A DNA stretch of 64,000 bases from IMG/VR virus record IMGVR_UViG_3300042350_002797, positions 124,001 to 188,000 of that record. One strand, given 5' to 3'. Of this stretch, positions 27,781 through 40,894 are shown one piece after another. The notes beneath the pieces are model-generated. The model ran no database searches. It worked only from the letters and a program-made list of their open reading frames with translations, and was not told the origin of the DNA. Each line of letters begins with the position of its first letter. Position 1 is the first letter of the stretch. The translations under genes were made by a program, and so were the position numbers.

Positions 27781-28628
27781 TAGGTTCCCCATGCATTTTT
27801 GAATAATGGAACTTGTAGTCTGTCACTGTATCTTAGTCCGTGTTTCATTGCTAATTCTGCAACACGGCGATTATTAAGAGCGTATACATTTTCGATACCC
27901 CCAACAGGCATTAAATAAATGTGCCCGCCAAAATCTTCCTGTTTATAAATTTCGATAACTTCTAATGCTTCGTTGACATCGTCTTCGCTAGCAACTACAA
28001 ATTTTAGATATGTATGTCCTAGCTCTTCATAACTTTTTACAATATCTGGTCGTATAGCATCTTCTCTTCTCTCTCCACTAACACTTAACTTTGGGCTCAC
28101 ACTAAATGTAAGATTATGATAGCCGTGTTTATGTGTCCATTTTTCTAGATATTTTCTAAAATCTTTTGATATTTCTTGAGTACCATTAGTTTCAAATGTG
28201 ATATCTTTCAATTTTTTTAATTTATCGTTATCTAATAAATCAGGATAGCTACGTTGCCACCCTAACAAAGGTTCTCCACCTGTTATAACTAAATGTATTC
28301 CTCTCCATTTATTATCAGGTAATAGATCTATCATTCTATTTGCTATGGCATCCACAGTGAGAACAGGACTTAGATCTTTAAATCTTGGATCCCAACTTGC
28401 ATAACTGTCGCATCCAGTTTCTACAATAGGAAGTTCCTCATATTTGTTGTACAAATGTACTACTTCTGCAATATCATCGTTGGCAGTGCTACGTTCTCCA
28501 GGAGGCATGCCGAACCCAGCACAGGTAAAGTTGCAACCAAATGTGCGTAAGAAAATAGAAGGAACACCCATGAAGCGTCCTTCTCCTTGTATACTATAAA
28601 ATAGTTCTGCTATTTTAATTTTACTCAT
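27780..28628 (-). CDS. queE: 7-carboxy-7-deazaguanine synthase (radical SAM)
   Basis: ELFYSIQGEG, FLRTFGCNFTC...CDS (third Cys after an insertion), ITGGEP, ETNGT, SVSPKL, LKFVV, YLMP, RLQ. Confidence 0.92.
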   Translation of the reverse strand: MSKIKIAELFYSIQGEGRFMGVPSIFLRTFGCNFTCAGFGMPPGERSTANDDIAEVVHLYNKYEELPIVETGCDSYASWDPRFKDLSPVLTVDAIANRMIDLLPDNKWRGIHLVITGGEPLLGWQRSYPDLLDNDKLKKLKDITFETNGTQEISKDFRKYLEKWTHKHGYHNLTFSVSPKLSVSGERREDAIRPDIVKSYEELGHTYLKFVVASEDDVNEALEVIEIYKQEDFGGHIYLMPVGGIENVYALNNRRVAELAMKHGLRYSDRLQVPLFKNAWGT

Positions 28629-28912
28629 TGTTTTAGTACCTCCAATGTAGCTATTTTGGCAATTCGCTCTCCAAAGTCATCATCTTTACCAATGATGTAC
28701 ATTTGTGTGTGAGTACGATCTTTCAGTCTATCATGATATCTAAATTCTACAATTTTGCCACCAATAGCATTGTAAATTGTAAAATTAAGAACGGGCTCAC
28801 TACGCATTGAATTACTTTCAACAACAATATCTTGTCCTACAATTTCTCTTCCACTTTCCCATGCTTCTTTAGACCATTCTTTGAATTTTTTCTTAAACCA
28901 TTTTTTAATCAT
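28625..28912 (-). CDS. Hypothetical protein
   Basis: 95 aa, coupled ORF. Confidence 0.6.
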   Translation of the reverse strand: MIKKWFKKKFKEWSKEAWESGREIVGQDIVVESNSMRSEPVLNFTIYNAIGGKIVEFRYHDRLKDRTHTQMYIIGKDDDFGERIAKIATLEVLKQ

Positions 28913-29126
28913 CTTTCATTCCTTCTAGAAATTCGTCAACTCGACGTTCCGCTTCAACTCTGTCCACAGCCATTAATGTTACAGTTAACATATTATCTTT
29001 GTCAAGTTTAATATCGTAAGGCATTTTTCCATTGAGAACAAACTCGTCAGCCAGAGGCCGAACTACTTTATATTCTTTGAGATTCTTCATTCTGAAAATT
29101 ACATCGTCGACATTATGCTTATTCAT
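28905..29126 (-). CDS. Hypothetical protein
   Basis: 73 aa, coupled ORF. Confidence 0.55.
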   Translation of the reverse strand: MNKHNVDDVIFRMKNLKEYKVVRPLADEFVLNGKMPYDIKLDKDNMLTVTLMAVDRVEAERRVDEFLEGMKDD

Positions 29127-29317
29127 TAACTATCTCTTTCCATGGAAGTAATTTCTGTTACTAGAGCAATAACTTGCTCTAAGTTTTGGCAGAGAATTCT
29201 AGCACTTTTATATTCGCCATCTGGATCTCGTCCACTTACGTCTACCATAAATCCGTTATCGTACATGTTAACAGTAAAACTATCCGAAACTTTTTCTAAT
29301 TTATCACTTACATTCAT
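29126..29317 (-). CDS. Hypothetical protein
   Basis: 63 aa, coupled ORF. Confidence 0.55.
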   Translation of the reverse strand: MNVSDKLEKVSDSFTVNMYDNGFMVDVSGRDPDGEYKSARILCQNLEQVIALVTEITSMERDS

Positions 29318-29318
29318 T

Positions 29319-29816
29319 TTAATTTTCCTCTTTAAAATCTATTACATCACCATTCTCGTCAGCACAAATAATTTTAACTTTGTTACCGTTTTCATCCTCG
29401 ATAAGAATTGGTCCCCAAATCCACGCCTCACATTCGTTTTGGCTCCATCCTTCTTCGTCTTCCAGTACTTCATATACACTGGATTCTTCAAAACGTTCTT
29501 TTAGTGCTTCTTGTAGTTCCTCGTCCATATCTTCTGGAAACTCTATATCTTCCCAACAGCCGTCCCACATAGTATCAAGTTCGACATTTTCGATATTATT
29601 ATAACAGCAATCGTACATATTGATGCTGTCTTTATTCTTGTCGCCTCCTGGAACATATGTGAATTCGAATTCAGGAGGATTATCATTATTTGTTTCTACA
29701 AAAAAACTACAACCACGGAATCCTGTTTTACGAATAATTGTTTTTCCATCTTTAACATAATGCTCGTGTTCTTCGCATGATTTTTTGTAGTAAGTCGATA
29801 CTTTCCAATTAGCCAT
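29319..29816 (-). CDS. Acidic hypothetical protein
   Basis: 165 aa, E/D-rich, AGGA SD. Confidence 0.65.
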   Translation of the reverse strand: MANWKVSTYYKKSCEEHEHYVKDGKTIIRKTGFRGCSFFVETNNDNPPEFEFTYVPGGDKNKDSINMYDCCYNNIENVELDTMWDGCWEDIEFPEDMDEELQEALKERFEESSVYEVLEDEEGWSQNECEAWIWGPILIEDENGNKVKIICADENGDVIDFKEEN

Positions 29817-29824
29817 GATTTTCC

Positions 29825-30601
29825 TTATCTAGGAGCAAAGTCCTGTTGTAGTTTAATGTTGTCAAAGAATTCTTTTTTAGTTCCTTGATCATCTTTAAAA
29901 GCACCTTTTAATACTGTAGTCTGTGTAAGACTGCTATGTGCCATAATTCCGCGATTTTCACAGCAGCCATGTGTGGCTTGTATGTAAACACCTACATCTT
30001 TGGCATCGGTCGCCTTCATAATCTCTCTAGCAATGTCATTAGCTAATTCTTCTTGTAAAGTGCCACGGCGAGCACACCACTGAGCAATACGAGTATACTT
30101 ACTGAGACCGATAAGTTTATTAGCGGCGATAATACCGATATAAGCAACACCAGATACAGGTTGGTGATGGTGACTACACATACTACGAAGTTCACTGCGA
30201 ACAACAAGCATGCCTTCGTACCGATCTGTGCTGTCATTAGGAAATGCTGTGCAATCTGGTGCCAGTTCGTATCTACCCGCCATAATTTCATTGTAATACA
30301 TCTTAGCTAGTCGTCTTGCTGTTCCTTGACTGTTAGGATCGGTTTCTCGATCAATTAATAGTGCATCCAATACATGTTCGAATGCCACAGTAGCTTCGTC
30401 AATTAACTGTTGTCGAGTTGAGTCTGCGTAGATGTATTCACTAATATTGTCGCCTGCCCAGAATCTTTTACCATCTCGCTTCATTTTAAAACGAAGTTGA
30501 TCGCTTACTTTGCCTTCTGAGTAGCCACCATTTCCAGCCATTGCGTCTACTCCTGATTCGTGAATATCATCGTTACTTACATACATTTTGTTATAAACCA
30601 T
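29825..30601 (-). CDS. folE: GTP cyclohydrolase I
   Basis: T..R.AKMY, SMCSHH, IGLSKY.R, QE.L, HGCCENRG. Confidence 0.95.
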   Translation of the reverse strand: MVYNKMYVSNDDIHESGVDAMAGNGGYSEGKVSDQLRFKMKRDGKRFWAGDNISEYIYADSTRQQLIDEATVAFEHVLDALLIDRETDPNSQGTARRLAKMYYNEIMAGRYELAPDCTAFPNDSTDRYEGMLVVRSELRSMCSHHHQPVSGVAYIGIIAANKLIGLSKYTRIAQWCARRGTLQEELANDIAREIMKATDAKDVGVYIQATHGCCENRGIMAHSSLTQTTVLKGAFKDDQGTKKEFFDNIKLQQDFAPR

Positions 30602-30619: not shown

Positions 30620-30648
30620 ATTTTATTATATTATTTAGGTTTTGTCAA
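30620..30648 (-). promoter_or_regulatory. sigma70 promoter for folE, with an embedded TAAATA
   Basis: TTGACA-17 nt-TAAAAT; CCTAAATAA inside the spacer. Confidence 0.7.
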
Positions 30649-31428
30649 TCGCAAAAGAGTATTTTTCTTTACTGCGGCACCTAATGTATTTAGGTTTATG
30701 CCACGGTCTTCAGAATATTTTAGTAGTGCTTCTGTATCTTTAGGAAAACAGGCACCGCCAAAACCATAGTATCCATCTGGACCAGGCACTTGAGTATGAC
30801 TATCGCCTATACGTCGATCCATTCTTATTAGGTAGGCAAGGTGTTTCCAATCATAATTATGAGTGTTTGCTAGTTGATTTAATTCATTCATAAAAACAAC
30901 TTTAGTTGCTAGGAATGTATTAATAGAATATTTTACAAATGCCGCTTCGCCTATACCACAATATTCTACGTGTTTAATACCTGGTTGTATTTCTTTTAAA
31001 ATACGTGCTGTGTCACGTTGATAGGCTACCACAGAACCACCTATAATAACCCATTCTGTATTACCAAAATCTGTAACACTAGATTCTGCCCGTAAGAATT
31101 CAGGAACATATACTAAATTAGGTAATTTTTTATTCCATAATTCGTAAAAATCCGGAGGAGCAGTGACTTTGCTAATAATAGTGCCGTTATATCCTTCTAG
31201 ATTTTTTAAAACTTCTTCTACTATACTGGTATCGCAATATCCATTGGTGCCTTGCGGACTAGGAACACAAACAAATACACTAGAACATTCTTTTTTAATT
31301 TGATTGTAAGTAGCTGTATAACCTTTAGCAGGATCTAAAATTATAGGTTCGAAAGATGTTATCAAGTTTTGAGTTATAGCTTCGCCTACGTACCCGTGCC
31401 CAATAATGCCAATTTTTTCATAAATCAT
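30631..31428 (-). CDS. UDP-glucose/GDP-mannose dehydrogenase-family protein (short form lacking the C-terminal domain)
   Basis: GIIGHGYVG, FVCVPSP, PEFLR, KY..N.FLA.KV.F.NE, GFGGACFPKD (catalytic Cys). Confidence 0.9.
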   Translation of the reverse strand: MIYEKIGIIGHGYVGEAITQNLITSFEPIILDPAKGYTATYNQIKKECSSVFVCVPSPQGTNGYCDTSIVEEVLKNLEGYNGTIISKVTAPPDFYELWNKKLPNLVYVPEFLRAESSVTDFGNTEWVIIGGSVVAYQRDTARILKEIQPGIKHVEYCGIGEAAFVKYSINTFLATKVVFMNELNQLANTHNYDWKHLAYLIRMDRRIGDSHTQVPGPDGYYGFGGACFPKDTEALLKYSEDRGINLNTLGAAVKKNTLLRLTKPK

Positions 31429-31640
31429 AAGTATTCACTTAATAATATTGTACATAAGCGATAATCGTTTTCTGTTTTAAATCTAAAAATTAAATGCATG
31501 GTAGACGACGCAGTAATGTAACGGTGTCCTGGCAATCCAAACACTTCCAACACCTTAACACAGATCTCATTCCACGGCATATCATCTTTTTTCCAATCGA
31601 TCCAAATATTGAACGAAGTATCTGACATGTCTTTAGACAT
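31425..31640 (-). CDS. Small hypothetical protein
   Basis: Start ATG 31640 coupled (TAATG) to an upstream 57-aa ORF; WNEIC..V.EVFGLPG.RY. Confidence 0.6.
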   Translation of the reverse strand: MSKDMSDTSFNIWIDWKKDDMPWNEICVKVLEVFGLPGHRYITASSTMHLIFRFKTENDYRLCTILLSEYL

Positions 31641-31813
31641 TATTCGACAAGTTCCATTTCCTCTATCATAGGATAATAGATCCAATTCATTTTTTCTTTT
31701 AATTCTTCGCACATAGCCTGAGCAGCTTCTTCTGCACGTTCTTTAGTATAATAGAGTCTTTCCATAGCTCTGTCGCCCTCAGTATTTGTAGCCGATGCAA
31801 GGTAAACTATCAT
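31640..31813 (-). CDS. Small hypothetical protein (57 aa, not in ORF track)
   Basis: MIVYLASATNTEGDRAMERLYYTKERAEEAAQAMCEELKEKMNWIYYPMIEEMELVE*; ATGA overlap with the HIT stop and TAATG overlap with the next gene. Confidence 0.65.
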   Translation of the reverse strand: MIVYLASATNTEGDRAMERLYYTKERAEEAAQAMCEELKEKMNWIYYPMIEEMELVE

Positions 31814-32181
31814 TTTCTATAATTCCCTTTATCCGGAATGACATGTCTAACTCCTCCTCTTGGATCTTCCATATCGCCTTTGCGTCGAGGTATCATATGC
31901 ACATGCGGATACATTACTGTTTGGCCAGCTGCTTCTCCAACATTTTGGCCGATGTTAAAAGCATCCCACCTTTCAGCTTCAACACCTTCGTGTCCGAACT
32001 TGTAGGCTGCTTTGTAGCATTCCCAGAGATTGTTCCAGTTTTCTTCGGTAGGCACAAATAACAAATGCCCTGGGGTAACTGCGTAAGCGTCTCTAAAGAC
32101 CCAGAAGTCTTTAGTTCTGTATTCAATTTCTGTCCACGGTGCTCTTTTTTCATTTAAGGCCTTTTCAATATCTGTCAGCAT
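31810..32181 (-). CDS. HIT-family nucleotide hydrolase
   Basis: D.Y.VTPGHLLFVP, N.G..AGQTV..PHVHMIPR. Confidence 0.92.
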   Translation of the reverse strand: MLTDIEKALNEKRAPWTEIEYRTKDFWVFRDAYAVTPGHLLFVPTEENWNNLWECYKAAYKFGHEGVEAERWDAFNIGQNVGEAAGQTVMYPHVHMIPRRKGDMEDPRGGVRHVIPDKGNYRK

Positions 32182-32545
32182 ACTCGTTCCAAACCATATT
32201 CATTAATGTAGAATAATTATCCCAGGCCTTTTTAACAGCAGGATTATTATTTCTTGCTTTAATCTCAATCATTTCTTTACGCTTCATATGATTGATGTAA
32301 TCTTGATCTCCACGAGATTTAACAATTACGTCATTCATTCTTTGATCAATTTCGGCTAAGGCATGAAAGTTATCTTTAGGTATTAGAATATCATAACACT
32401 CTAACTCTTCTGTAGCAAAATAAAAATCATGTGCATCCTGATAAGTGCTAACCTGTGGTGGTTTAGCCTTTCTAATAGTGCGTGAACTATGACGTAATTG
32501 AATATCCCAATTACAGCAGAAACGATCTAGTTCTTTATTATCCAC
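32165..32545 (-). CDS. Hypothetical protein
   Basis: Probable GTG start at 32545; C-terminal NPAVKKAWDNY helix. Confidence 0.55.
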   Translation of the reverse strand: MDNKELDRFCCNWDIQLRHSSRTIRKAKPPQVSTYQDAHDFYFATEELECYDILIPKDNFHALAEIDQRMNDVIVKSRGDQDYINHMKRKEMIEIKARNNNPAVKKAWDNYSTLMNMVWNEYADRY

Positions 32546-33113
32546 GCCAAAATTCCTCCCAGGGATAGACAATCCAACAGTCTTCTTCGGCTTTGTTAAT
32601 TTCTATAGTTGAATAATCTACTTCTTCTTTGCTAGCAAGATTATTATGAATCACGGCAAATCTTACGTTGTTATGAAAGATATTTTTCCAAGCATGATTA
32701 TTTGGAAGGCATCCACTGGGCCAGTCTTTTTTAATCCAGGCAATAGTAGCACCGGTATCGTTAATGTCATCTACTATCAAAATCTTTTTACGTAGATCTC
32801 GATTAGTAGGATCGTGACGTACAGGCAATCCAGTAATCTCAAAATGCTCATACCCTCGATCATTCATAGGAACATATCCAAAAGCATCTTCGGCCATGCC
32901 TAAGTCGCTCACACACTCGCCACCGTCACGTAAACTGACCTGTAATGGTCGCATAGGAATATCGAGGTATTGACTAAGCATTACAGCAGGAACAGCACCA
33001 CCGCGTGTGATTCCTACAATGTAATCTGGACGCCAGTTATCTTTTTGTAATTGCCTAGCAATTTCGATAACACTGCCTTGAATATCCGACCAAGTTACAT
33101 GTATTTTTTTCAT
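32538..33113 (-). CDS. Type I phosphoribosyltransferase (Gpt/xanthine-guanine-like)
   Basis: IVGITRGG.VPA, PRPP loop ILIVDDINDTGAT, WIVYPWE; likely start ATG 33113. Confidence 0.9.
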   Translation of the reverse strand: MKKIHVTWSDIQGSVIEIARQLQKDNWRPDYIVGITRGGAVPAVMLSQYLDIPMRPLQVSLRDGGECVSDLGMAEDAFGYVPMNDRGYEHFEITGLPVRHDPTNRDLRKKILIVDDINDTGATIAWIKKDWPSGCLPNNHAWKNIFHNNVRFAVIHNNLASKEEVDYSTIEINKAEEDCWIVYPWEEFWRG

Positions 33114-33322
33114 CTTACACCATTTGCTAAGGTTGTCCAAAGTTTAGAGACTTCTTCTTGATTTAGAAAGAAATCGTATGTACTAGAATTGGTTAATTCG
33201 CCTTTGTCGTTATACTGTTCCCCAGTAAACATAAGATGTTTAAGTCCGTCTGGTTTCATACAGTCATTAACTTTTAAACGAAGCTTCCAAGCCGGTTGAT
33301 CTGTTATTAGTTGTTCAATCAT
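33110..33322 (-). CDS. Small hypothetical protein
   Basis: Likely start ATG 33322 (ATGA overlap). Confidence 0.55.
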   Translation of the reverse strand: MIEQLITDQPAWKLRLKVNDCMKPDGLKHLMFTGEQYNDKGELTNSSTYDFFLNQEEVSKLWTTLANGVR

Positions 33323-33681
33323 TTTGAGTCCTTTAAAGTTTCCCAAGTTTTATATTCTGCTAACGCTTTGTTGTATTCATCATTAATTTTCTTAAGCTTT
33401 GAATACTTCTCCTCCATTATAGCATCTCTTGTAGGAATGTTCAACATAGTTTCTATTCGTTTTAATCTTTCGTGCAGATCGTCACCATTCCATTCTATCT
33501 TGCCGTTAATTTTAATACTGGGATTACTACTATTCGGAATTTCCATAACAGGTTTTCCGTTATTGTTTCCAAATTGAGTAGTTGGATGAATTGTATTGGA
33601 CCATACTGCACTGCCACCAGACCCACTAGGGCTTACATAAATTTGACCAGTAGTTGTAGCAGGTATAGTAAACGTTGTCAT
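33319..33681 (-). CDS. Hypothetical protein
   Basis: Likely start ATG 33681; T/S/G-rich N-terminus, helical C-terminus. Confidence 0.6.
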   Translation of the reverse strand: MTTFTIPATTTGQIYVSPSGSGGSAVWSNTIHPTTQFGNNNGKPVMEIPNSSNPSIKINGKIEWNGDDLHERLKRIETMLNIPTRDAIMEEKYSKLKKINDEYNKALAEYKTWETLKDSK

Positions 33682-33682
33682 A

Positions 33683-34078
33683 CTACTTGTATCCTTTACG
33701 TTCTCTTTCTTTTCCGTCAAAATCTTCTTTAACCATTTTATAAACTTCTTTAAATTTTCTGTATGCGATTTCCAGTCCAGGATATTCTTTACACATTTCT
33801 TGAACACGTTCGTAATCTGGAAATCTACCATCAAACTCGTCTTTATAAAAATTAGTAAAAGTAGTAAAAGAATCGATACCAGTTAAATCTACTGTTTCTA
33901 TATTGCCTATTGTATAAGATCCTGAATTATAAGGTGTACCTGTTAATGTTATAATGTCCGATGTGTTCAAACTTGGGAGGCTATTCACATCCCAAGTTAC
34001 AGTGATATCATCAGATTTTAAAGATTCTGTTTCATCTAAGGTTACTGTATAAATTGGTTCCTGAGAAGAATTGTTCAC
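33683..34078 (-). CDS. Hypothetical protein
   Basis: T/S-rich N-terminus; C-terminal MCKEYPGLEIAYRKFKEVY. Confidence 0.6.
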   Translation of the reverse strand: MNNSSQEPIYTVTLDETESLKSDDITVTWDVNSLPSLNTSDIITLTGTPYNSGSYTIGNIETVDLTGIDSFTTFTNFYKDEFDGRFPDYERVQEMCKEYPGLEIAYRKFKEVYKMVKEDFDGKERERKGYK

Positions 34079-35126
34079 GTAAAGCCTCCGTTTGTTTGTA
34101 CAACATTGGCAATCTTGTTTCGTAAAAATTCATGTGATCTATTATTGTTTTTACTAACATCTGCCTATGATCCATATAATGGTCCCACGTATCCGTCCAG
34201 TTGCTAGGATATTTGAAATTGTTAAAGTACATTTCTGTATATGAAAGTCTGTCTGGCACCATAGGAATAGCATTAAGAACACAACCTTCGTAACAACTAA
34301 TTCCTAGTGTTTCTTGTAGATTAGCACTAAACACAATTTTTGCTTCACCCAATAAGTTATGATATTCATTTTTCGTCAAGTCTTGTTCTTGGCAAATTAT
34401 AAATTCATACTGAGGTAGTAATTCTTTTAAATCTCTAAAAATATTCACCTGCTTTTCTGGAGCAAGTCTGTGTGGGAAAAGAATCAGATCTCTTTTTTTC
34501 ATTCCTTGATATTGTGTAAAAATATCTTGGAAATACTCCATAGGCCAGCCAGAACGAATTATTTTTTGACTGTTTAATAAGTCTTCGAAATCCTCTTGAT
34601 ACCAAGGATTTTCACTCTTTAAACCATTCATTAATAAATTGTCTACAAACATCTTAATATGAAAATCTGTAGCAAAATAATTATGATCGATAGCATCAAA
34701 GAATGACTTTTCAGCATATCGAACCCACGGCTTATTGCCAATAAGTCTGCCTAAAAAGTCTTGGGGATCATAACTACCGGCGTGCCACAGTGCGTGTATT
34801 TTAACAGGTATACTAAGTAAGCTACTCATGTATTTTAAATTAATAATACCTGGATGCCAAGCATCTGTAAATAAAAAATGATCGTGAGCTTTTATTTTGC
34901 CAGTAGTAAATAATCGGCTAATCTCTTCAATTTGACAAGACTTGTAGATATTAGTGCCACCAAAATTAAGGAAGGCGCCAGGAGTAGTGGCACGAGGAAT
35001 ATCCTCAGGGCCAGAGATAACTTCAACATTTTTATGAACCTTTCGTAATGTTCGGGGTAAATGTTCTTTCCATTGAGCAGTATAACGTGTTTCTACTGCT
35101 TCTAAGTCTACAATATAGATAGTCAT
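34032..35126 (-). CDS. GT-B fold glycosyltransferase (GT4-like)
   Basis: WHAGSYD, FPHRLAPEKQ, FSANLQETLGISCYEG (ExxGxxxxE donor-binding motif), P+VP.RLSY.EM. Confidence 0.85.
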   Translation of the reverse strand: MTIYIVDLEAVETRYTAQWKEHLPRTLRKVHKNVEVISGPEDIPRATTPGAFLNFGGTNIYKSCQIEEISRLFTTGKIKAHDHFLFTDAWHPGIINLKYMSSLLSIPVKIHALWHAGSYDPQDFLGRLIGNKPWVRYAEKSFFDAIDHNYFATDFHIKMFVDNLLMNGLKSENPWYQEDFEDLLNSQKIIRSGWPMEYFQDIFTQYQGMKKRDLILFPHRLAPEKQVNIFRDLKELLPQYEFIICQEQDLTKNEYHNLLGEAKIVFSANLQETLGISCYEGCVLNAIPMVPDRLSYTEMYFNNFKYPSNWTDTWDHYMDHRQMLVKTIIDHMNFYETRLPMLYKQTEALREQFFSGTNLYSNLR

Positions 35127-35372: not shown

Positions 35373-35768
35373 TTAATATTTGATAAAACTACCATTTTCT
35401 CCATCTTCGGAGACCTCGATCCAAACTTCTCTATTTGGATACTTTTTTGAAATCATGTCATACAAATCATCTGACATCATTTCGCAACTTTTATAATCTA
35501 ATTGCAATACAGCTTGGTCGCCATTATACAATTCTTCAAGCCATCTTTTAAACTGGATGAACTCAATGTCTCTGTCATTGTGATTAACGCCAATCCAGAC
35601 ACGAAAATGAAAGATATGGCGATGAGGATGGCCGAGGAACGAAACGTCATATTTGTCTCCTGTTGCTAGGTTAGGATCAGTTAATGCTGCTGGATATTTA
35701 TGAATACCTTCTTTACGAAAGGTAACCCAAATCATTTTATTTGGTCTTATGTCTTGTTTGATTATCAT
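35373..35768 (-). CDS. QueD-like T-fold protein of the DpdL (CDG decarboxylase) type
   Basis: LGHPHRHIF (LxxxHRHxF) instead of the QueD CxxxHGH motif; DRDIEF, SCE, VSEDGENG. Confidence 0.7.
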   Translation of the reverse strand: MIIKQDIRPNKMIWVTFRKEGIHKYPAALTDPNLATGDKYDVSFLGHPHRHIFHFRVWIGVNHNDRDIEFIQFKRWLEELYNGDQAVLQLDYKSCEMMSDDLYDMISKKYPNREVWIEVSEDGENGSFIKY

Positions 35769-36307
35769 TTGTATTCAAAAAAATCGTTAAAGGTTGATTT
35801 ACTCATTGATTCAATTTTCTTCATAGATCCTACAGGTATTCGAAATACATAAGAATTTTCTGTTCTTTGTTCAAAATGACCGTATTCTGATCCTCTTATG
35901 TATGAAGACCTATCTCCATTAATTATTTTCTGTCTTCCAATTTCGTAAGCTTCTTCTATTTTTTCTTGTATGTATGGATCTGTAAAATCGAATAAATCTT
36001 GGTTCGTGACTATTCCATCGGCAGTAGTTATTCTAAATTGCTTTTGTAGTTTTTCAAAAATATGAGTTTGTTTATAAGATAAAGAACAAATATCTTGAAC
36101 AGTTATAGTTCCTACACTATTGGCAGAACCAGAATTTACATCTTTAGTTTTAACTTCTATACCAATCTGTTGTAAATCTGCGCCAGGGCCTTGGTTAATG
36201 TTCCACCCATCTCTAGACATAACTTGTTCAAATTGTTTTCCTCGAATACTATGATCTTTAGATAATACAGTACCAGTATAATCTTTTTTGATTCGTTTAA
36301 TTTTCAT
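35765..36307 (-). CDS. MutH/Sau3AI-like PD-(D/E)xK endonuclease
   Basis: RGKQFE...N.GPGADL..IGIEVKT; downstream EKI..AYE..RQKIING and YVFRI resemble the Sau3AI/MutH layout. Start ATG 36307 (ATGA overlap). Confidence 0.65.
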   Translation of the reverse strand: MKIKRIKKDYTGTVLSKDHSIRGKQFEQVMSRDGWNINQGPGADLQQIGIEVKTKDVNSGSANSVGTITVQDICSLSYKQTHIFEKLQKQFRITTADGIVTNQDLFDFTDPYIQEKIEEAYEIGRQKIINGDRSSYIRGSEYGHFEQRTENSYVFRIPVGSMKKIESMSKSTFNDFFEYK

Positions 36308-36837
36308 ACTGGGCTGTCCTGTGTATATTGATCCCAATGTGTATACTTAGTTTTACGCATTAGATCGTGTAGTTGATGGGTCCATACTCCAGGATTAGTA
36401 GCACCCCAAGTACGGTCGTCAATTTTAAGTGTTGCGTTGTAGTTGTAAAGTTTAATGTAAGGTAATTTTACACTAATCATAGGAATAAATCTATCTTGTT
36501 CGCACCACCCTTCTTCGTGTATTTCTTCAGCATATTTGACATCGAAGTCTAAGCAGACCCAATATCCTGCCTCCAAGCATCCCATAATCCTGTTATCCCA
36601 AATTTTCCAGTTATCATATGTTGCCGGATTAAAACTTTGACTAGTACCAAAGTAAATTTGTTTAATACGTTTATCTTTATCTTCGAAGCTTTGAGAATCT
36701 TCTGCTATTGCAAGAATGTCTTTTAGACTCGGTGTTCCTACAACGAACAATGTGTACATACCGTGAGCTACAGTATGTTCTACTTCATAGCCTGTGAAAT
36801 AAGTTACATCTTGCCTTTGTTCTGTGTTTAATCCCAT
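36304..36837 (-). CDS. Conserved-looking hypothetical protein within the deazaguanine cluster
   Basis: FTGYEVEHT..GM.TLFVVG, IYFG..QSF, LKIDD..W.ATNPGVW. Confidence 0.65.
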   Translation of the reverse strand: MGLNTEQRQDVTYFTGYEVEHTVAHGMYTLFVVGTPSLKDILAIAEDSQSFEDKDKRIKQIYFGTSQSFNPATYDNWKIWDNRIMGCLEAGYWVCLDFDVKYAEEIHEEGWCEQDRFIPMISVKLPYIKLYNYNATLKIDDRTWGATNPGVWTHQLHDLMRKTKYTHWDQYTQDSPV

Positions 36838-37739
36838 TTAATATATCCTCTACTGTAGCCTTGTGGTCTGTTTAATCCATCTTCGAATGCTTGTTGCCAT
36901 TCAGTGTTGCGATTATAGCACTTAGTCCAGAATGTGTCAACTTTTAAATTATTTGTTTTTACCCAAAGCTCTGCTTCGTACATTGCATTATAAAATCCGT
37001 TATGTCTTGGACTAGGCATAGCAATAGTATTGGCATTCCAAAGTAGTTCGCTAAATGTAGTTGTGAATGATTCTTTTTCCGCAGCTATAATCCAAACGCC
37101 TTGCGGAGCCAACAGTTTACGTTTCAGCACTTCTGTGTGTTCTCTAATGTCAATAATCACATCATATTTTTCGTAACTTGGCTCTTGTACTAATACATTC
37201 TCATTTGCCCACAGTTCGTGATTGCTATTCCCCCAAACTTCAATAGTACCAAATTTGTAATAATCTAGTTTTAGTGTGTTGTAAGCAACCCAGGCAAGAA
37301 AGCCACTACCAATTATCAAACATTTAGATAGTTGTAGTATTTTGCTTTGAAGTAATGTGCTGTTTTGTTTGACAATGTTAATACCACAAGCTACTGGTTC
37401 TAAAATATATTTAGGCTCGGCGCTAGGAACTACTATAAATTCTCTAGCTCTAACATTGTAATAGTCGGCATATGCAGGCTCTCCTCGAGTCGCTACATAA
37501 TCGCCTTCTTTAACATTGAGTATTTGTCCACCAACTTTGGTAACAATACCTAATCCTTCGTGACCACTCATATGAGCAGGCAATGTAGGAAATTTGCCTG
37601 TCATCATATCTATATCACTACGGCAAACACCAGTCATAACAGCTTTAACTTCAATTTCAGTATCAGCAGGTTCTGGTTTAGTCCATTCTTCTTCTACAAA
37701 CTTACCATCACTGTATGTTCTAAGTAAACGTACTTTCAA
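36828..37739 (-). CDS. Zn-dependent (MDR) alcohol/sugar dehydrogenase
   Basis: GVCRSD, GHEG.G.V..VG, EPVAC, IIGSGF; likely TTG start at 37739 with GGAGA SD. Confidence 0.88.
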   Translation of the reverse strand: MKVRLLRTYSDGKFVEEEWTKPEPADTEIEVKAVMTGVCRSDIDMMTGKFPTLPAHMSGHEGLGIVTKVGGQILNVKEGDYVATRGEPAYADYYNVRAREFIVVPSAEPKYILEPVACGINIVKQNSTLLQSKILQLSKCLIIGSGFLAWVAYNTLKLDYYKFGTIEVWGNSNHELWANENVLVQEPSYEKYDVIIDIREHTEVLKRKLLAPQGVWIIAAEKESFTTTFSELLWNANTIAMPSPRHNGFYNAMYEAELWVKTNNLKVDTFWTKCYNRNTEWQQAFEDGLNRPQGYSRGYIKWD

Positions 37740-38611
37740 AAGTTCTCCATTCTTTCGTGAATCCAATAATCTATTGTATTTTGTTTACTCCAGAATTTGT
37801 CATTATCGAGATTACGTATTGCATCGTCGATCATACGTTCGTAAGCATCTTCTGGGCATAATCCTAATTCATATGTAAATGTGCTATTGCCGAAATCCAT
37901 TTCAATGTTACGTTTGTCTTTATCTAATGTGCGCCAGTCTGCGGTCAATTTCCATTTGTTACTAAATCGTATTTGAGCAAAGTCGTCTACATCGTATGTA
38001 CCATCTGAATTAACTGTGCCGTATTCTGTGTTTAATAAATCTTTTAAATGGTATCTCATCAAACTAGAACGATTATTCATAGCAGTAGTTAACCAGTCAG
38101 GGTTTAACGCTATATACAAGCTCAGTAAGTGAGGCATTAGATCTCTACTAACTCCACCATAAGCAAGTTTTTTTGTAGTAAACCAGCTTCCAGGACTAGG
38201 CACACGATCTTGATTTAACCAATTAAGTCTGACCCTGTCCGCCGATTGAGCAGATTCTTGTAATTCTTTGATGTTACTACGCCACATATTATTCTTCACC
38301 ATCATAAAACGTGTATCAGGAAAGGAGTGAACAAGAGTCATCCAATTACTAGCCGTGGCCACACCAGGCTTTTCGATAAACACAATTTTACATTCGTGGG
38401 AAATTTTTACAGCTAATTGAAAATGTGTAAAATTTGGTGTACAGATGTGAGCAGTATCAAAAGGGCCTCTAGCTAGTATAGCTGATACAGCATCAGGAAA
38501 GTCTGCTTTTTTACTAATATCAGAATCTACTGTTACAATCTCGGCTCCTAGATTGGTCAGTACATTTTTGTATAATTGACCGATACCCATGCCTATAATA
38601 AGACTTTTCAT
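37736..38611 (-). CDS. Gfo/Idh/MocA-family oxidoreductase
   Basis: IIGMGIG, ICTPNFTH, IEKPG, GG..RDLMPH, DVDD. Confidence 0.88.
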   Translation of the reverse strand: MKSLIIGMGIGQLYKNVLTNLGAEIVTVDSDISKKADFPDAVSAILARGPFDTAHICTPNFTHFQLAVKISHECKIVFIEKPGVATASNWMTLVHSFPDTRFMMVKNNMWRSNIKELQESAQSADRVRLNWLNQDRVPSPGSWFTTKKLAYGGVSRDLMPHLLSLYIALNPDWLTTAMNNRSSLMRYHLKDLLNTEYGTVNSDGTYDVDDFAQIRFSNKWKLTADWRTLDKDKRNIEMDFGNSTFTYELGLCPEDAYERMIDDAIRNLDNDKFWSKQNTIDYWIHERMENF

Positions 38612-39111: not shown

Positions 39112-39353
39112 TTTACATTTTCCTCATACTGTTTAAAAAGTCTAGTTACTGGTTCCATTCTTTCTTGAAAAATATCAGGACTTGTTTGAGATGTTTTATT
39201 CATATCATAATAATCAGGATAGTGTCGTAGACACCATCTTGCTTCATCTCTGATAATTTTAGGAACTCGGGGAGTATGCTGTGGGTTACACAAGTTTACT
39301 AACAGCTCTCTTGTTCTAAGCACAGCTCGAAATCTTTCATCTGGCAAAGTCAT
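39108..39353 (-). CDS. Small conserved phage protein
   Basis: MTLPDER.RAV...TPRVPK.IR..A...LRHYP motif. Confidence 0.65.
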   Translation of the reverse strand: MTLPDERFRAVLRTRELLVNLCNPQHTPRVPKIIRDEARWCLRHYPDYYDMNKTSQTSPDIFQERMEPVTRLFKQYEENVK

Positions 39354-40894
39354 TTTATACTTTCTTCAAGTTCATCAAGTTTATCTTCGGAAAAGTCTTC
39401 AACGACGTCAGATTGTACATTATCATTATCATTATCGTCAAAGAATTTGGCAAAATTGGTATTTGCGTTTATAGTGCGTTTTCCTGTGTAACCTCTAGTG
39501 CCAGGAATTGCCATCCAAAACTTACTAAATTCTTCTACGATTTGATCAGCAACTCCTCTATCACTAGTTGCAAAAATTGCATCTATTACGTCTTTAAAAA
39601 AGATTCTATCAAATTTTTCTTGAACTAGCATACCAGGACATAAACCCGCATCATATTGTCGATTGGCTTCTTGAACAGAACTAAGATGCATCCAAACATT
39701 ATGCCCCATGAGAATAGCATAAGTGAAACTATCCCAACTAGTTTTATTTTCTTTACCCATCCTATTTAGGTTACCAGGAGCGTAAACACAAACTTCGTTA
39801 GTTTTAACACCATCTAATACAGGGCTATTTTCTACATACTTGAATATCCCATCTTGAATTAATGTATCTCTAAATAATCTTGTATCTGTTGCGTATTGTT
39901 TATTATCTAAAGTAGGTAACATTCTATATAACCACTTCTTACGATCTTCAATTTCTGTCTGTATGTACATTTGGCCATTAGCAGTGGCCAAAAATGGACT
40001 TGCACAATCAAAACTAATAGTAAAGTTTTCATTATGATATTTTCTTACAGCACGTTGAATATCGGTAAGTAATAATGCCCATTCCAATTTACTTGTTCCT
40101 AAGAAGTGCATCCAGTCTTGTTTACCTTTTTCTAATAAACCGTCAAATCTTAAAGATACAAGTCTTTTCAAAGTGAGATGCAAATCGCACATATTTTGTC
40201 CACCCATAGCCCAACCGTTAAAATGTGCATCTGGAAATACCTTCGGATCGCAATAGTGTTTCATACGTTGATACCAATCTTCAGCATCTGAATGATTTTC
40301 ACCTTGTAACACGTTTAAAAATTTACAATTACCATTTCGATTTTTAATAAAGTAGTCATTATTTAGATATGTGCCTTGAACTGCTTCCATATAGGAATTA
40401 ATTTTACTAGCAGCAGCGCCTTCAGGACTACGAGCTACCCAAGCAGGAATATCTAAACACATTCCATAATCCATTAGACTGTCCATCCAAGTCAATACTT
40501 GACTACGTTTTTTCTGTGCAGCCGGACAATTAGGATCTTTCCAGTCGGCTTCCCACTTTCCTTTACCTATCTGGAATCCTCCAGAGTCCCCAAGAACCCA
40601 ACTGTCTCCATTTCTTGGACGATTCCTGAACATAGATTCTCTATCATCATTTTTAGCTAAATCTAAATTTGCGTGACCAGCAGAATATAAACACCACTTA
40701 TAATAGAATAATCCTTTTTGAGGATCTAGATAATTAAGTCCTTCGACATCGTTAATAAAGTTTTGTGGTATTCTGCTAGGTTGTACATAAGGATATCTAT
40801 GTCTCTGATATCCAATGAACGATGCATAAAAGCCGCTAGTAGCAGGTAAAAATAATGCATAATCGTTTTGTGTGGCAGTTAAATCTGTATTCAT
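39350..40894 (-). CDS. dpdA: tRNA-guanine transglycosylase-like DNA base-exchange enzyme (DpdA family)
   Basis: GDSGGFQ, LDIP, NVLQG, GWAMGG, HFLG, FDCASP, late HN; context of queE/folE and of clamp/polymerase. Confidence 0.82.
   Translation of the reverse strand: MNTDLTATQNDYALFLPATSGFYASFIGYQRHRYPYVQPSRIPQNFINDVEGLNYLDPQKGLFYYKWCLYSAGHANLDLAKNDDRESMFRNRPRNGDSWVLGDSGGFQIGKGKWEADWKDPNCPAAQKKRSQVLTWMDSLMDYGMCLDIPAWVARSPEGAAASKINSYMEAVQGTYLNNDYFIKNRNGNCKFLNVLQGENHSDAEDWYQRMKHYCDPKVFPDAHFNGWAMGGQNMCDLHLTLKRLVSLRFDGLLEKGKQDWMHFLGTSKLEWALLLTDIQRAVRKYHNENFTISFDCASPFLATANGQMYIQTEIEDRKKWLYRMLPTLDNKQYATDTRLFRDTLIQDGIFKYVENSPVLDGVKTNEVCVYAPGNLNRMGKENKTSWDSFTYAILMGHNVWMHLSSVQEANRQYDAGLCPGMLVQEKFDRIFFKDVIDAIFATSDRGVADQIVEEFSKFWMAIPGTRGYTGKRTINANTNFAKFFDDNDNDNVQSDVVEDFSEDKLDELEESIK

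What the first reader, a model, noticed from the sequence alone, without database searches (positions are those of the whole stretch)
35765..36307. MutH/Sau3AI-like restriction-type endonuclease embedded in the base-modification operon
Seen: G..FE...N....AD....GIEVKT core plus downstream segments resembling the MutH/Sau3AI layout, coupled by ATGA overlaps between the DpdL-type gene and the conserved 177-aa gene. GATC, the MutH/Sau3AI site, is common in this window (first at 10-13), so it is not avoided. Established: 7-deazaguanine modifications block many restriction enzymes, and T4 degrades unmodified host DNA with modification-sensitive nucleases. Inference: a phage-borne restriction-modification-like pair, in which the modified base protects self and the nuclease cuts host or competitor DNA.
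Basis: partly seen in the sequence, partly recalled or inferred. Interest (0 to 1): 0.75.

Follow-up and report, generated by a model that had tools for sequence, protein, structure and literature searches.

The report
Mobile MutH-fold nuclease beside dpdL
A small, intact nuclease with the fold of the repair enzyme MutH sits inside a giant phage's 7-deazaguanine DNA-modification operon, but related phages show that it is an optional, movable cassette, not a fixed partner of the modification genes.

Summary
Window 35765-36307 (-) encodes a 180-aa protein that no sequence library names. Its confident AlphaFold model matches MutH (Z 13.7) and Sau3AI (Z 10.9). The MutH catalytic residues E56, D70, E77, K79 and K116 have counterparts (E27, D44, E51, K53, K86) that are conserved across about 300 sequence clusters. 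The gene overlaps both neighbours by ATGA. It lies in a FolE/QueD/QueE/DpdL/DpdA-like cluster without QueC, the published gene set for 2'-deoxy-7-deazaguanine DNA. GATC is not avoided.

In 79 related loci the junction upstream of dpdL is empty in 30 and holds this gene in 10. In 39 it holds other genes: an HNH nuclease, a possible T5orf172-type nuclease, 2OG oxygenases and small ORFs. The cassette boundaries are exact. Its phylogeny is decoupled from its flanks, and a DpdA tree needs at least 6 gains or losses for 8 carriers. The gene is under purifying selection (dN/dS about 0.1). Every resolved copy lies inside this cluster.

Best reading (about 0.45): a free-standing, homing-type mobile endonuclease. 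Biochemistry is needed to decide.

The parts
35765..36307 (-). MutH/Sau3AI-fold endonuclease gene, 180 aa: the mobile cassette itself
   Evidence: ORF. AF2 model pLDDT 88. MutH Z 13.7 and Sau3AI Z 10.9. Homology with the closest relative L022 breaks at about window 35769-36316, which coincides with the ORF. GC3 is 16%, the lowest in the cluster.
36050..36229 (-). Codons of the catalytic residues E27, D44, E51, K53 and K86, the counterparts of MutH E56, D70, E77, K79 and K116
   Evidence: hhalign of the family profile against E. coli MutH. MutH numbering checked. D44, K53 and K86 are in 99-100%, E51 in 98% and E27 in 92% of 146 family representatives.
36304..36837 (-). Conserved 177-aa gene (o177), upstream neighbour; its stop overlaps the nuclease start (ATGA)
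   Evidence: Homologues sit beside DpdL in more than 70 viral contigs, in PA5oct and in ACP17. AF2 pLDDT 86 with no clear fold match.
35373..35768 (-). DpdL-type gene (proposed 7-carboxy-7-deazaguanine decarboxylase), downstream neighbour; its start overlaps the nuclease stop (ATGA)
   Evidence: LxxxHRHxF motif (PMC10516641). PHROG 17812 at E 5e-33. More than 600 viral contigs hold relatives; the 80 fetched are 80-99% identical.
36912..36940 (-). Perfect sigma-70-type promoter (TTGACA, 17 nt, TG-extended TATAAT) just upstream of o177. It could drive o177, the nuclease and dpdL.
   Evidence: 12 of 12 consensus match. This is a consensus match only; function is not shown.
39350..40894 (-). DpdA-like DNA guanine transglycosylase gene, 514 aa
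   Evidence: GDSGGFQ motif. Nearest named Atlas clusters are TGT (0.94) and DpdA PF23859 (0.89). 34% identical homologue in PA5oct next to QueE.
36828..38611 (-). ADH_N-type and GFO/IDH/MocA-type oxidoreductase genes, an optional module between the DpdA-like gene and o177
   Evidence: Pfam hits. Present in some relatives and absent in others.
27828..30601 (-). QueE homologue (27828-28616) and FolE (29825-30601), upstream steps of the 7-deazaguanine pathway
   Evidence: QueD/PTPS lies outside the window at G000 217584-217997. No QueC in the genome.

Best explanation
The gene encodes an active, single-domain endonuclease of the MutH/Sau3AI branch of the PD-(D/E)xK superfamily. It is carried on a discrete, optional cassette that moves among related giant phages and lodges at gene junctions of their 7-deazaguanine cluster, nearly always directly upstream of dpdL. 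I read it as a free-standing homing-type endonuclease. Shown: the fold; the conserved active site; purifying selection; exact cassette boundaries; patchy distribution; a phylogeny decoupled from the flanks; and bona fide homing-type nucleases at the same junctions in sister phages. Inferred: during co-infection the enzyme nicks or cuts the DNA of relatives that lack the cassette, near the very conserved start of dpdL, and repair from the carrier genome copies the cassette in. It is probably co-transcribed with o177 and dpdL from a strong early-type promoter. Whether 7-deazaguanine affects cleavage is not known.
For: Fold and active site.
Optional cassette: of 79 loci with DpdL at least 80% identical, 30 have o177 abutting dpdL, 10 carry the gene, and 39 carry other genes. 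The other genes include an HNH nuclease (L086, PF01844, E 9e-7) and a 170-193-aa family with a weak T5orf172 hit.
Exact swaps: L085 (MutH-like) and L086 (HNH) share a backbone that is 90-91% identical, and only the cassette differs. About 500 bp to its left and 700 bp to its right are 97-100% identical, against 77-98% further out. Window and L022 lose homology exactly over the ORF.
Decoupled phylogeny: L020 against L050 is 84% identical for the nuclease but 45% for DpdA and 50% for o177. L016 against L020 is 42% against 81% and 81%. Spearman correlations with the flanking genes run from -0.14 to 0.19.
Patchiness: a DpdA tree of 66 loci needs at least 6 gains or losses for 8 carriers, against a shuffled mean of 7.7.
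A second location (L010, between o247 and the DpdA gene) is a junction that holds NUMOD3 proteins in L102 and L104.
GC3 is 16%, against 20-37% in the neighbours.
Against: No target site or protective polymorphism was identified.
The protein has no extra DNA-binding domain, and its structural relatives read only 4-5 bp. This fits a short-site enzyme better than a classical long-site homing enzyme.
All 27 copies found are full length. The 69 junctions without the gene show no remnant, and dN/dS is 0.08-0.19. The decay phase of a homing-endonuclease cycle is therefore not seen.
The junction also holds non-nuclease cargo (2OG oxygenases, small ORFs). General recombination at a hot spot could therefore move the cassette without help from its own nuclease.
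Every resolved context is a dpd cluster, which a purely selfish element does not require.
Confidence: 0.45

Rival explanations
1. One reading: a restriction-like nuclease that depends on the modification. It cuts a short G-containing site (GATC or another) in unmodified DNA of the host or of competing phages. The phage's own 7-deazaguanine DNA is refractory because the N7 contacts are lost. The gene can persist only in genomes that carry the dpd cluster, so it travels with that cluster.
For: Every resolved context of the family, about 20 distinct loci, lies inside the DNA polymerase / o247 / DpdA-like / dpdL cluster, although the exact position varies: after o177, after ADH, after DpdA, or before DpdA. 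No copy was found elsewhere in 10 large related contigs totalling about 1.7 Mb.
The protein is a small single domain like the short-site enzymes MutH, BcnI and MvaI.
Purifying selection is strong and there are no pseudogenes.
GATC and the other palindromes checked have the same observed/expected ratios in carrier and non-carrier loci, as expected if self DNA is protected.
The genome has FolE, QueD, QueE, DpdL and a DpdA-like gene but no QueC, the published signature of dDG DNA, which fully replaces G in phage phiST (PMC10516641). The DNA of the relative PA5oct resists enzymes with G-containing sites (PMC12191111).
The gene is probably co-transcribed with dpdL.
Against: Only 13% of related clusters carry it, so the pair is not a conserved unit.
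Its place is taken by HNH and T5orf172-type genes in sister phages.
Adjacency to dpdL is not needed for protection that acts in trans.
DpdA acts after replication (PMC10516641), so nascent phage DNA would be exposed to such a nuclease.
Specificity and sensitivity to the modification are untested.
Confidence: 0.3
2. A MutH analogue keyed to 7-deazaguanine instead of Dam methylation. After replication the phage DNA is hemi-modified. The enzyme nicks the unmodified nascent strand to direct repair, to start recombination-dependent replication, or to open DNA for the DpdA-type base exchange.
For: The closest structural match is MutH bound to DNA. All five MutH catalytic positions are conserved. The modification is post-replicative (PMC10516641). 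The gene is embedded between modification genes.
Against: The gene is dispensable: 87% of related clusters, PA5oct and ACP17 lack it. No MutL or MutS partner was looked for. A low-confidence global alignment leaves the MutH hairpin that carries the methyl sensor Y212 without a counterpart.
Confidence: 0.07
3. General hot-spot cargo: a nuclease-fold protein moved passively by recombination at a plastic junction. Its role would be unrelated both to homing and to the modification, for example defence against other mobile elements or host take-over.
For: The same junctions carry unrelated cargo: 2OG oxygenases, a Na+/H+ exchanger and small ORFs. Flanking genes are themselves mosaic. A protein of the same fold but another sequence family exists in cyanophage S-CAM7.
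Against: It does not explain why every resolved copy is in a dpd cluster and nearly always abuts dpdL.
Confidence: 0.13

Closest known systems
E. coli MutH (mismatch-repair GATC nickase; PDB 2aoq, 2azo)
   Same: Best structural match: Z 13.7 with 168 of 180 residues aligned. Counterparts of E56, D70, E77, K79 and K116, with the same D-x6-E-x-K spacing. Single-domain protein.
   Different: About 50 residues shorter and 12-15% identical. The Pfam MutH model scores 12.8 bits against a cut-off of 23. The C-terminal DNA-reading part is shorter, and the Y212 methyl-sensor hairpin has no aligned counterpart (low confidence). It is phage-borne and sits in a base-modification operon. No MutL or MutS link was examined.
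Sau3AI (type II restriction enzyme, GATC; PDB 4pxg, 7xm0)
   Same: The N-terminal catalytic domain matches at Z 10.9 and the C-terminal effector domain at Z 8.8. It is the top Swiss-Prot model hit.
   Different: Sau3AI is 489 aa with two MutH-like domains and a cognate methyltransferase. Here there is one domain, no methyltransferase next to it, and the candidate protection is a deazapurine.
BcnI and MvaI (monomeric restriction enzymes of the MutH fold)
   Same: Same fold class (Z 7.2 and 4.2). They show that this fold reads short sites other than GATC.
   Different: Weaker matches, larger proteins and bacterial restriction-modification context.
Free-standing homing endonucleases of T4-like phages (Seg, Mob, Hef types)
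   Same: Sporadic presence between conserved genes. Exact presence/absence boundaries. Alternative nuclease genes at the same junction. Phylogeny decoupled from the flanks.
   Different: From my own knowledge, those are GIY-YIG or HNH enzymes, usually with NUMOD or other DNA-binding modules and long degenerate targets. This one is a bare PD-(D/E)xK domain. No target is known.
T4 endonucleases II and IV (host DNA degradation spared by modified phage DNA), and the bacterial Dpd restriction-modification system
   Same: The concept of a nuclease that spares DNA carrying the element's own base modification. In bacteria, 7-deazaguanine insertion by DpdA is coupled to restriction (abstract of PMC10164549).
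   Different: There is no sequence or fold relation to those nucleases, as far as I know. Modification sensitivity was not tested here. The gene is optional, not a fixed system component.

Membership tests
MutH/Sau3AI endonuclease family (PD-(D/E)xK) | MutH-type alpha/beta fold | tested here: met
   AF2 pLDDT 88. VIA-align Z 13.7 to MutH and 10.9 to Sau3AI, well above the next unrelated rows. Foldseek probability 1.00 to MutH and Sau3AI.
MutH/Sau3AI endonuclease family (PD-(D/E)xK) | Catalytic residues equivalent to E56, D70, E77, K79 and K116 | tested here: met
   hhalign pairs them with E27, D44, E51, K53 and K86 (E 3.4e-4). D44, E51, K53 and K86 are invariant in 63 diverse members, and E27 is in at least 90%.
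MutH/Sau3AI endonuclease family (PD-(D/E)xK) | Recognition by the Pfam MutH model PF02976 above its gathering score | tested here: not met
   12.8 bits against a cut-off of 23, E 0.028. It is nevertheless the only ORF of the 364-kb genome that the model touches. No Pfam hit at E up to 0.1 in hmmscan.
MutH/Sau3AI endonuclease family (PD-(D/E)xK) | GATC specificity and the methyl-sensing C-terminal hairpin (MutH R184, K186, Y212) | tested here: inconclusive
   A global hhalign puts the invariant R156 opposite R184 and leaves the Y212 hairpin unaligned, but confidence in that stretch is low. Specificity itself cannot be read from sequence.
Free-standing homing endonuclease gene | Sporadic presence at one conserved junction among close relatives, with exact boundaries | tested here: met
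   10 of 79 loci carry it and 30 junctions are empty. L085 against L086 and window against L022 show exact swaps. At least 6 gains or losses on the DpdA tree.
Free-standing homing endonuclease gene | Gene history independent of the flanking genes | tested here: met
   Pairwise identities are uncorrelated with o177, DpdL, DpdA and o247 (Spearman -0.14 to 0.19). Carriers in the two deep DpdA clades share an 82-84% identical nuclease.
Free-standing homing endonuclease gene | Cleaves the cassette-less allele near the insertion site and is copied in by repair | not testable with these tools
   Inspection of the junction sequences showed no discriminating site. This needs enzyme assays or phage crosses.
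Restriction-modification-like pair (nuclease plus protective base modification) | Genetic linkage of the nuclease to the modification genes | tested here: met
   All resolved contexts are in the DpdA-like/dpdL cluster. None was found elsewhere in 10 related contigs. One short contig, L009, is unresolved.
Restriction-modification-like pair (nuclease plus protective base modification) | Nuclease blocked by the cognate modification and active on unmodified DNA | not testable with these tools
   Only indirect evidence: GATC and other palindromes have the same observed/expected ratios in carriers and non-carriers.
dDG (2'-deoxy-7-deazaguanine) pathway as defined in PMC10516641 | FolE, QueD, QueE, DpdL (LxxxHRHxF) and a DpdA present; QueC absent | tested here: met
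   The base in the DNA was not measured.

The most novel reading that the evidence does not exclude
The enzyme reads the presence or absence of 7-deazaguanine. It would then be either a phage-borne restriction-type nuclease whose self-protection is a deazapurine, or a MutH analogue that nicks the unmodified strand of hemi-modified DNA. In either case it would be a minimal 180-aa enzyme usable as a reagent for mapping 7-deazaguanine in DNA. It would also be a mobile module that can spread only among genomes that already make the modified base.
Probability: 0.3. Interest if true: 0.8.

Novelty: new variant of a known kind. Interest (0 to 1): 0.55.

Why it matters
It defines an unannotated family of minimal MutH-fold nucleases: about 300 clusters at 50% identity, with no hit above threshold in Pfam, PHROGs, NCBIfam or PADLOC. 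So far the family is known only from the 7-deazaguanine clusters of uncultured giant phages. If it is a homing-type element, it adds the MutH fold to the short list of folds used by mobile phage endonucleases. It also marks dpdL as a recombination hot spot that shapes how these modification clusters evolve. If it is blocked by 7-deazaguanine, it is a phage-encoded restriction-like weapon and a candidate tool enzyme. Both outcomes can be tested with commercially available 7-deaza-dGTP.

Tried and rejected
Sequence-level identification failed. Pfam, PHROGs, NCBIfam and PADLOC gave no significant hit. phmmer and two profiles against PDB sequences gave only chance hits such as bL20 and phage p2 ORF16.

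megablast and tblastn against 50,697 phage records found nothing for the nuclease.

The 63-sequence alignment was too diverse for the search for related loci. The 10-sequence one worked.

I re-ran it without those rows.

The o177 model gave no convincing fold match, and the Atlas gave no usable hit.

A search for decayed copies in 69 junctions without the gene found none.

Palindrome statistics show no site depleted specifically in carriers. This neither identifies a recognition site nor shows self-avoidance.

Inspection of 60 nt upstream and 45 nt inside dpdL showed no polymorphism separating carriers from non-carriers.

I rejected the idea that the nuclease is a core enzyme of the modification pathway, because most clusters lack it. 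I rejected a chance ORF, because about 300 clusters conserve length, active site and frame, with dN/dS about 0.1.

I sent no complex prediction, because the report claims no protein-protein binding.

Full report
THE OBSERVATION

Window 35765-36307 (minus strand) is a 180-codon ORF with an ATG start. Its start overlaps the stop of the upstream 177-aa gene (o177, 36304-36837). Its stop overlaps the start of the downstream 131-aa gene (35373-35768). Both overlaps are ATGA.

The window is part of a 364,554-bp virus record that CheckV rates as complete. No sequence library names the protein. Pfam, PHROGs, NCBIfam and PADLOC gave nothing significant. Sequence searches of the PDB returned only chance hits. 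The 50,697 phage records gave no tblastn match.

FOLD AND ACTIVE SITE

Ten close homologues gave alignment A1. The AlphaFold2 model built on it has mean pLDDT 88.2 and pTM 0.82.
- An exhaustive structural comparison with 48,161 PDB chains ranks MutH bound to DNA first: 2aoq_A, Z 13.7, 168 residues aligned.
- Next come the catalytic domain of Sau3AI (Z 10.9) and its C-terminal domain (Z 8.8).
- BcnI follows at Z 7.2, and other restriction enzymes lie lower.
- Foldseek agrees against the PDB, Swiss-Prot models and AlphaFold DB clusters.

A profile search of 1.84 billion representatives found 302 clusters at E up to 0.001, nearly all 180-200 aa long. D44, K53, K86 and R156 are in 99-100% of 146 of them, E51 in 98% and E27 in 92%.

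hhalign of this profile against E. coli MutH (sequence taken from NC_000913) pairs E27, D44, E51, K53 and K86 with MutH E56, D70, E77, K79 and K116 (numbering checked). From my own knowledge of the MutH literature, these are the catalytic residues.

The Pfam MutH model touches only this ORF in the whole genome, but below threshold: 12.8 bits against a cut-off of 23. A forced global alignment puts the invariant R156 opposite MutH R184. It leaves the hairpin that carries the methyl sensor Y212 without a counterpart. Confidence there is low, so I treat this as a lead only.

THE OPERON

- The downstream gene has the published DpdL signature LxxxHRHxF (PMC10516641).
- The 514-aa gene at 39350-40894 has the GDSGGFQ motif. 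Its nearest named clusters are TGT and DpdA.
- The genome also has FolE, a QueE homologue (window 27828-28616) and a QueD/PTPS gene. It has no QueC.
- This is the gene set that PMC10516641 links to 2'-deoxy-7-deazaguanine, which fully replaces G in phage phiST.
- The relative PA5oct has homologues of the DpdA-like gene and of o177. A preprint reports that its DNA resists several enzymes with G-containing sites (PMC12191111).
- A perfect sigma-70-type promoter lies just upstream of o177.

The modified base itself was not measured.

COMPARATIVE GENOMICS

The DpdL gene is very conserved. More than 600 viral contigs hold relatives, and I fetched the best 80. In the 79 that also hold o177, the o177|dpdL junction falls into three classes:
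- Empty in 30 loci, where o177 abuts dpdL.
- Holding a member of this nuclease family in 10 loci.
- Holding other genes in 39 loci.

The other occupants are:
- a common 120-aa gene, with or without a 70-aa gene;
- an HNH endonuclease (L086, PF01844, E 9e-7);
- a 170-193-aa family with a weak T5orf172 hit (L022, L047, L082, L087);
- 2OG-Fe(II) oxygenases (L037, L045, L064).

The boundaries are exact.
- L085 and L086 share a backbone that is 90-91% identical. They differ only in that one has the MutH-like gene and the other the HNH gene.
- The 500 bp to the left and 700 bp to the right of the cassette are 97-100% identical, against 77-98% further out.
- The closest relative of the window (L022, DpdL 99% identical) loses homology over window 35769-36316, which is the ORF. 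It carries the 170-aa gene there instead.

The nuclease's history is decoupled from its flanks.
- L020 and L050 share an 84% identical nuclease but only 45% identical DpdA and 50% identical o177.
- L016 and L020 show the reverse: 42% against 81% and 81%.
- Rank correlations with four flanking genes run from -0.14 to 0.19.
- On a DpdA tree of 66 loci, the 8 carriers need at least 6 gains or losses, close to the shuffled mean of 7.7.

The ORF has the lowest GC3 of the cluster: 16% against 20-37%. PA5oct and Acidovorax phage ACP17 have the DpdA-like gene and o177 but no such nuclease.

WHAT SPEAKS FOR A LINK TO THE MODIFICATION

Every context I could resolve is inside this cluster.
- Most copies lie directly upstream of dpdL: after o177 (most loci), after the ADH-like gene (L103), or after the DpdA-like gene (the P0164 contig).
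- In one case the copy lies between o247 and the DpdA-like gene (L010).
- Ten large related contigs without the gene at the junction, about 1.7 Mb in all, have no copy elsewhere.
- One short contig (L009) has unrecognised neighbours.

All 27 copies are full length. No remnant exists in the other junctions. dN/dS is 0.08-0.19.

GATC is not avoided: O/E is 1.07 in the genome and 1.10 in both carrier and non-carrier loci. No other palindrome that I checked is depleted specifically in carriers.

The second junction, o247|DpdA, is itself variable. It holds NUMOD3 proteins, which are typical modules of homing endonucleases, and also a Na+/H+ exchanger.

INTERPRETATION

The well-supported part, which I rate at about 0.9, is this: an intact MutH-fold endonuclease, kept by selection, carried on an optional mobile cassette that is confined to 7-deazaguanine clusters.

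What the nuclease is for is not settled. I favour a free-standing homing-type endonuclease (0.45) for three reasons:
- the patchy distribution;
- the exact swaps with HNH and T5orf172-type genes at the same junction;
- the independent phylogeny.

The extreme conservation of dpdL would make it a good homing target. Against this reading:
- no target was found;
- the protein has no extra DNA-binding module;
- no decaying copies are seen;
- the junction also takes non-nuclease cargo.

It does not explain why adjacency to dpdL is kept, or why most clusters do without the gene. It must also deal with nascent, not yet modified phage DNA, because DpdA acts after replication. The two readings are not mutually exclusive: T4 endonuclease II, from my own knowledge, is related to GIY-YIG homing enzymes.

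A MutH-like nickase that reads hemi-modified DNA (0.07) and passive hot-spot cargo (0.13) remain possible.

COMPARISON WITH THE KNOWN

The protein works like a member of the MutH/Sau3AI branch in fold and active site. By sequence it falls below the family model. It is about 50 residues shorter than MutH and occurs in a new setting. I know of no described homing-type or phage-operon nuclease with this fold. Literature searches for MutH-like proteins in phages, and for homing endonucleases together with 7-deazaguanine, returned nothing on it. A 196-aa protein of cyanophage S-CAM7 shares the fold but belongs to another sequence family. I therefore rate the finding as a new variant of a known kind, of moderate interest. 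The interest would rise if the enzyme proves sensitive to 7-deazaguanine.

Noticed in passing
window 36304-36837 (-); L002 5995-6501; L021 7043-7441: The 177-aa gene o177 accompanies the DpdA-like gene and DpdL in more than 70 viral contigs. It is also in PA5oct (EST35_0364) and in Acidovorax phage ACP17 (ASD50402). It has no Pfam family. Its confident AF2 model (pLDDT 86) has no clear fold match; three QueE chains appear at Z 5.5-6.1. It is a candidate for the unknown extra factor that PMC10516641 says may be needed to make dDG.
   Followed up: partly
window 30631-35126 (-): Four genes travel with the cluster in many relatives: a xanthine/guanine phosphoribosyltransferase-like gene (32538-33140), a HIT-like gene (31810-32181), a UDP-glucose-dehydrogenase-like gene (30631-31428) and a 364-aa gene (34032-35126). 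This hints at nucleotide-level handling of the base or at sugar chemistry beyond plain dDG.
   Followed up: no
window 36828-38611 (-): The ADH_N-type and GFO/IDH/MocA-type oxidoreductase pair is an optional module. It is present between the DpdA-like gene and o177 in some relatives and absent in others. In PA5oct two genes of matching size lie next to the o177 homologue, 30 kb from the DpdA-like gene; they were not tested for homology.
   Followed up: partly
window 36912-36940 (-): A 12-of-12 sigma-70 consensus promoter with an extended -10 lies inside the 3' end of the ADH-like gene, just upstream of o177.
   Followed up: no
whole genome G000: Some hexamer palindromes are strongly avoided: CTGCAG O/E 0.21, GTGCAC 0.11, AGCGCT 0.09, GGATCC 0.48. 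GTGCAC is also nearly absent (0.03) from 712 kb of related loci. Avoidance of G-containing sites is unexpected if every G is protected.
   Followed up: partly
L085 4900-6700 against L086: Two phages whose backbones are 90-91% identical are 97-100% identical over o177, dpdL and o92, on both sides of a swapped cassette (MutH-like against HNH). Identity drops to 77-88% further right. This points to recent recombination focused on the junction.
   Followed up: partly
L053 2291-3460; L055 642-1814; L102 3315-4016; L104 3987-4694; L010 193-789: The o247|DpdA junction is a second variable site. It holds a Na+/H+ exchanger family protein, NUMOD3 proteins, small ORFs and, in L010, the MutH-like gene.
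   Followed up: partly
L037 5352-5999; L045 5310-5999; L064 4747-6011: 2OG-Fe(II) oxygenase genes (PF13759, DUF6445) occupy the o177|dpdL junction in some relatives.
   Followed up: no
window 33110-33346 (-): By eye, the 78-aa ORF resembles the roughly 70-aa family that sits directly upstream of dpdL in 18 related loci. This suggests that small genes shuffle within the cluster.
   Followed up: no
BFVD A0A7D5JWA5: An uncharacterised 196-aa protein of Synechococcus phage S-CAM7 has the same MutH-like fold (Foldseek E 4e-6, 15% identity). Small MutH-fold proteins may therefore be more widespread in T4-like phages.
   Followed up: no
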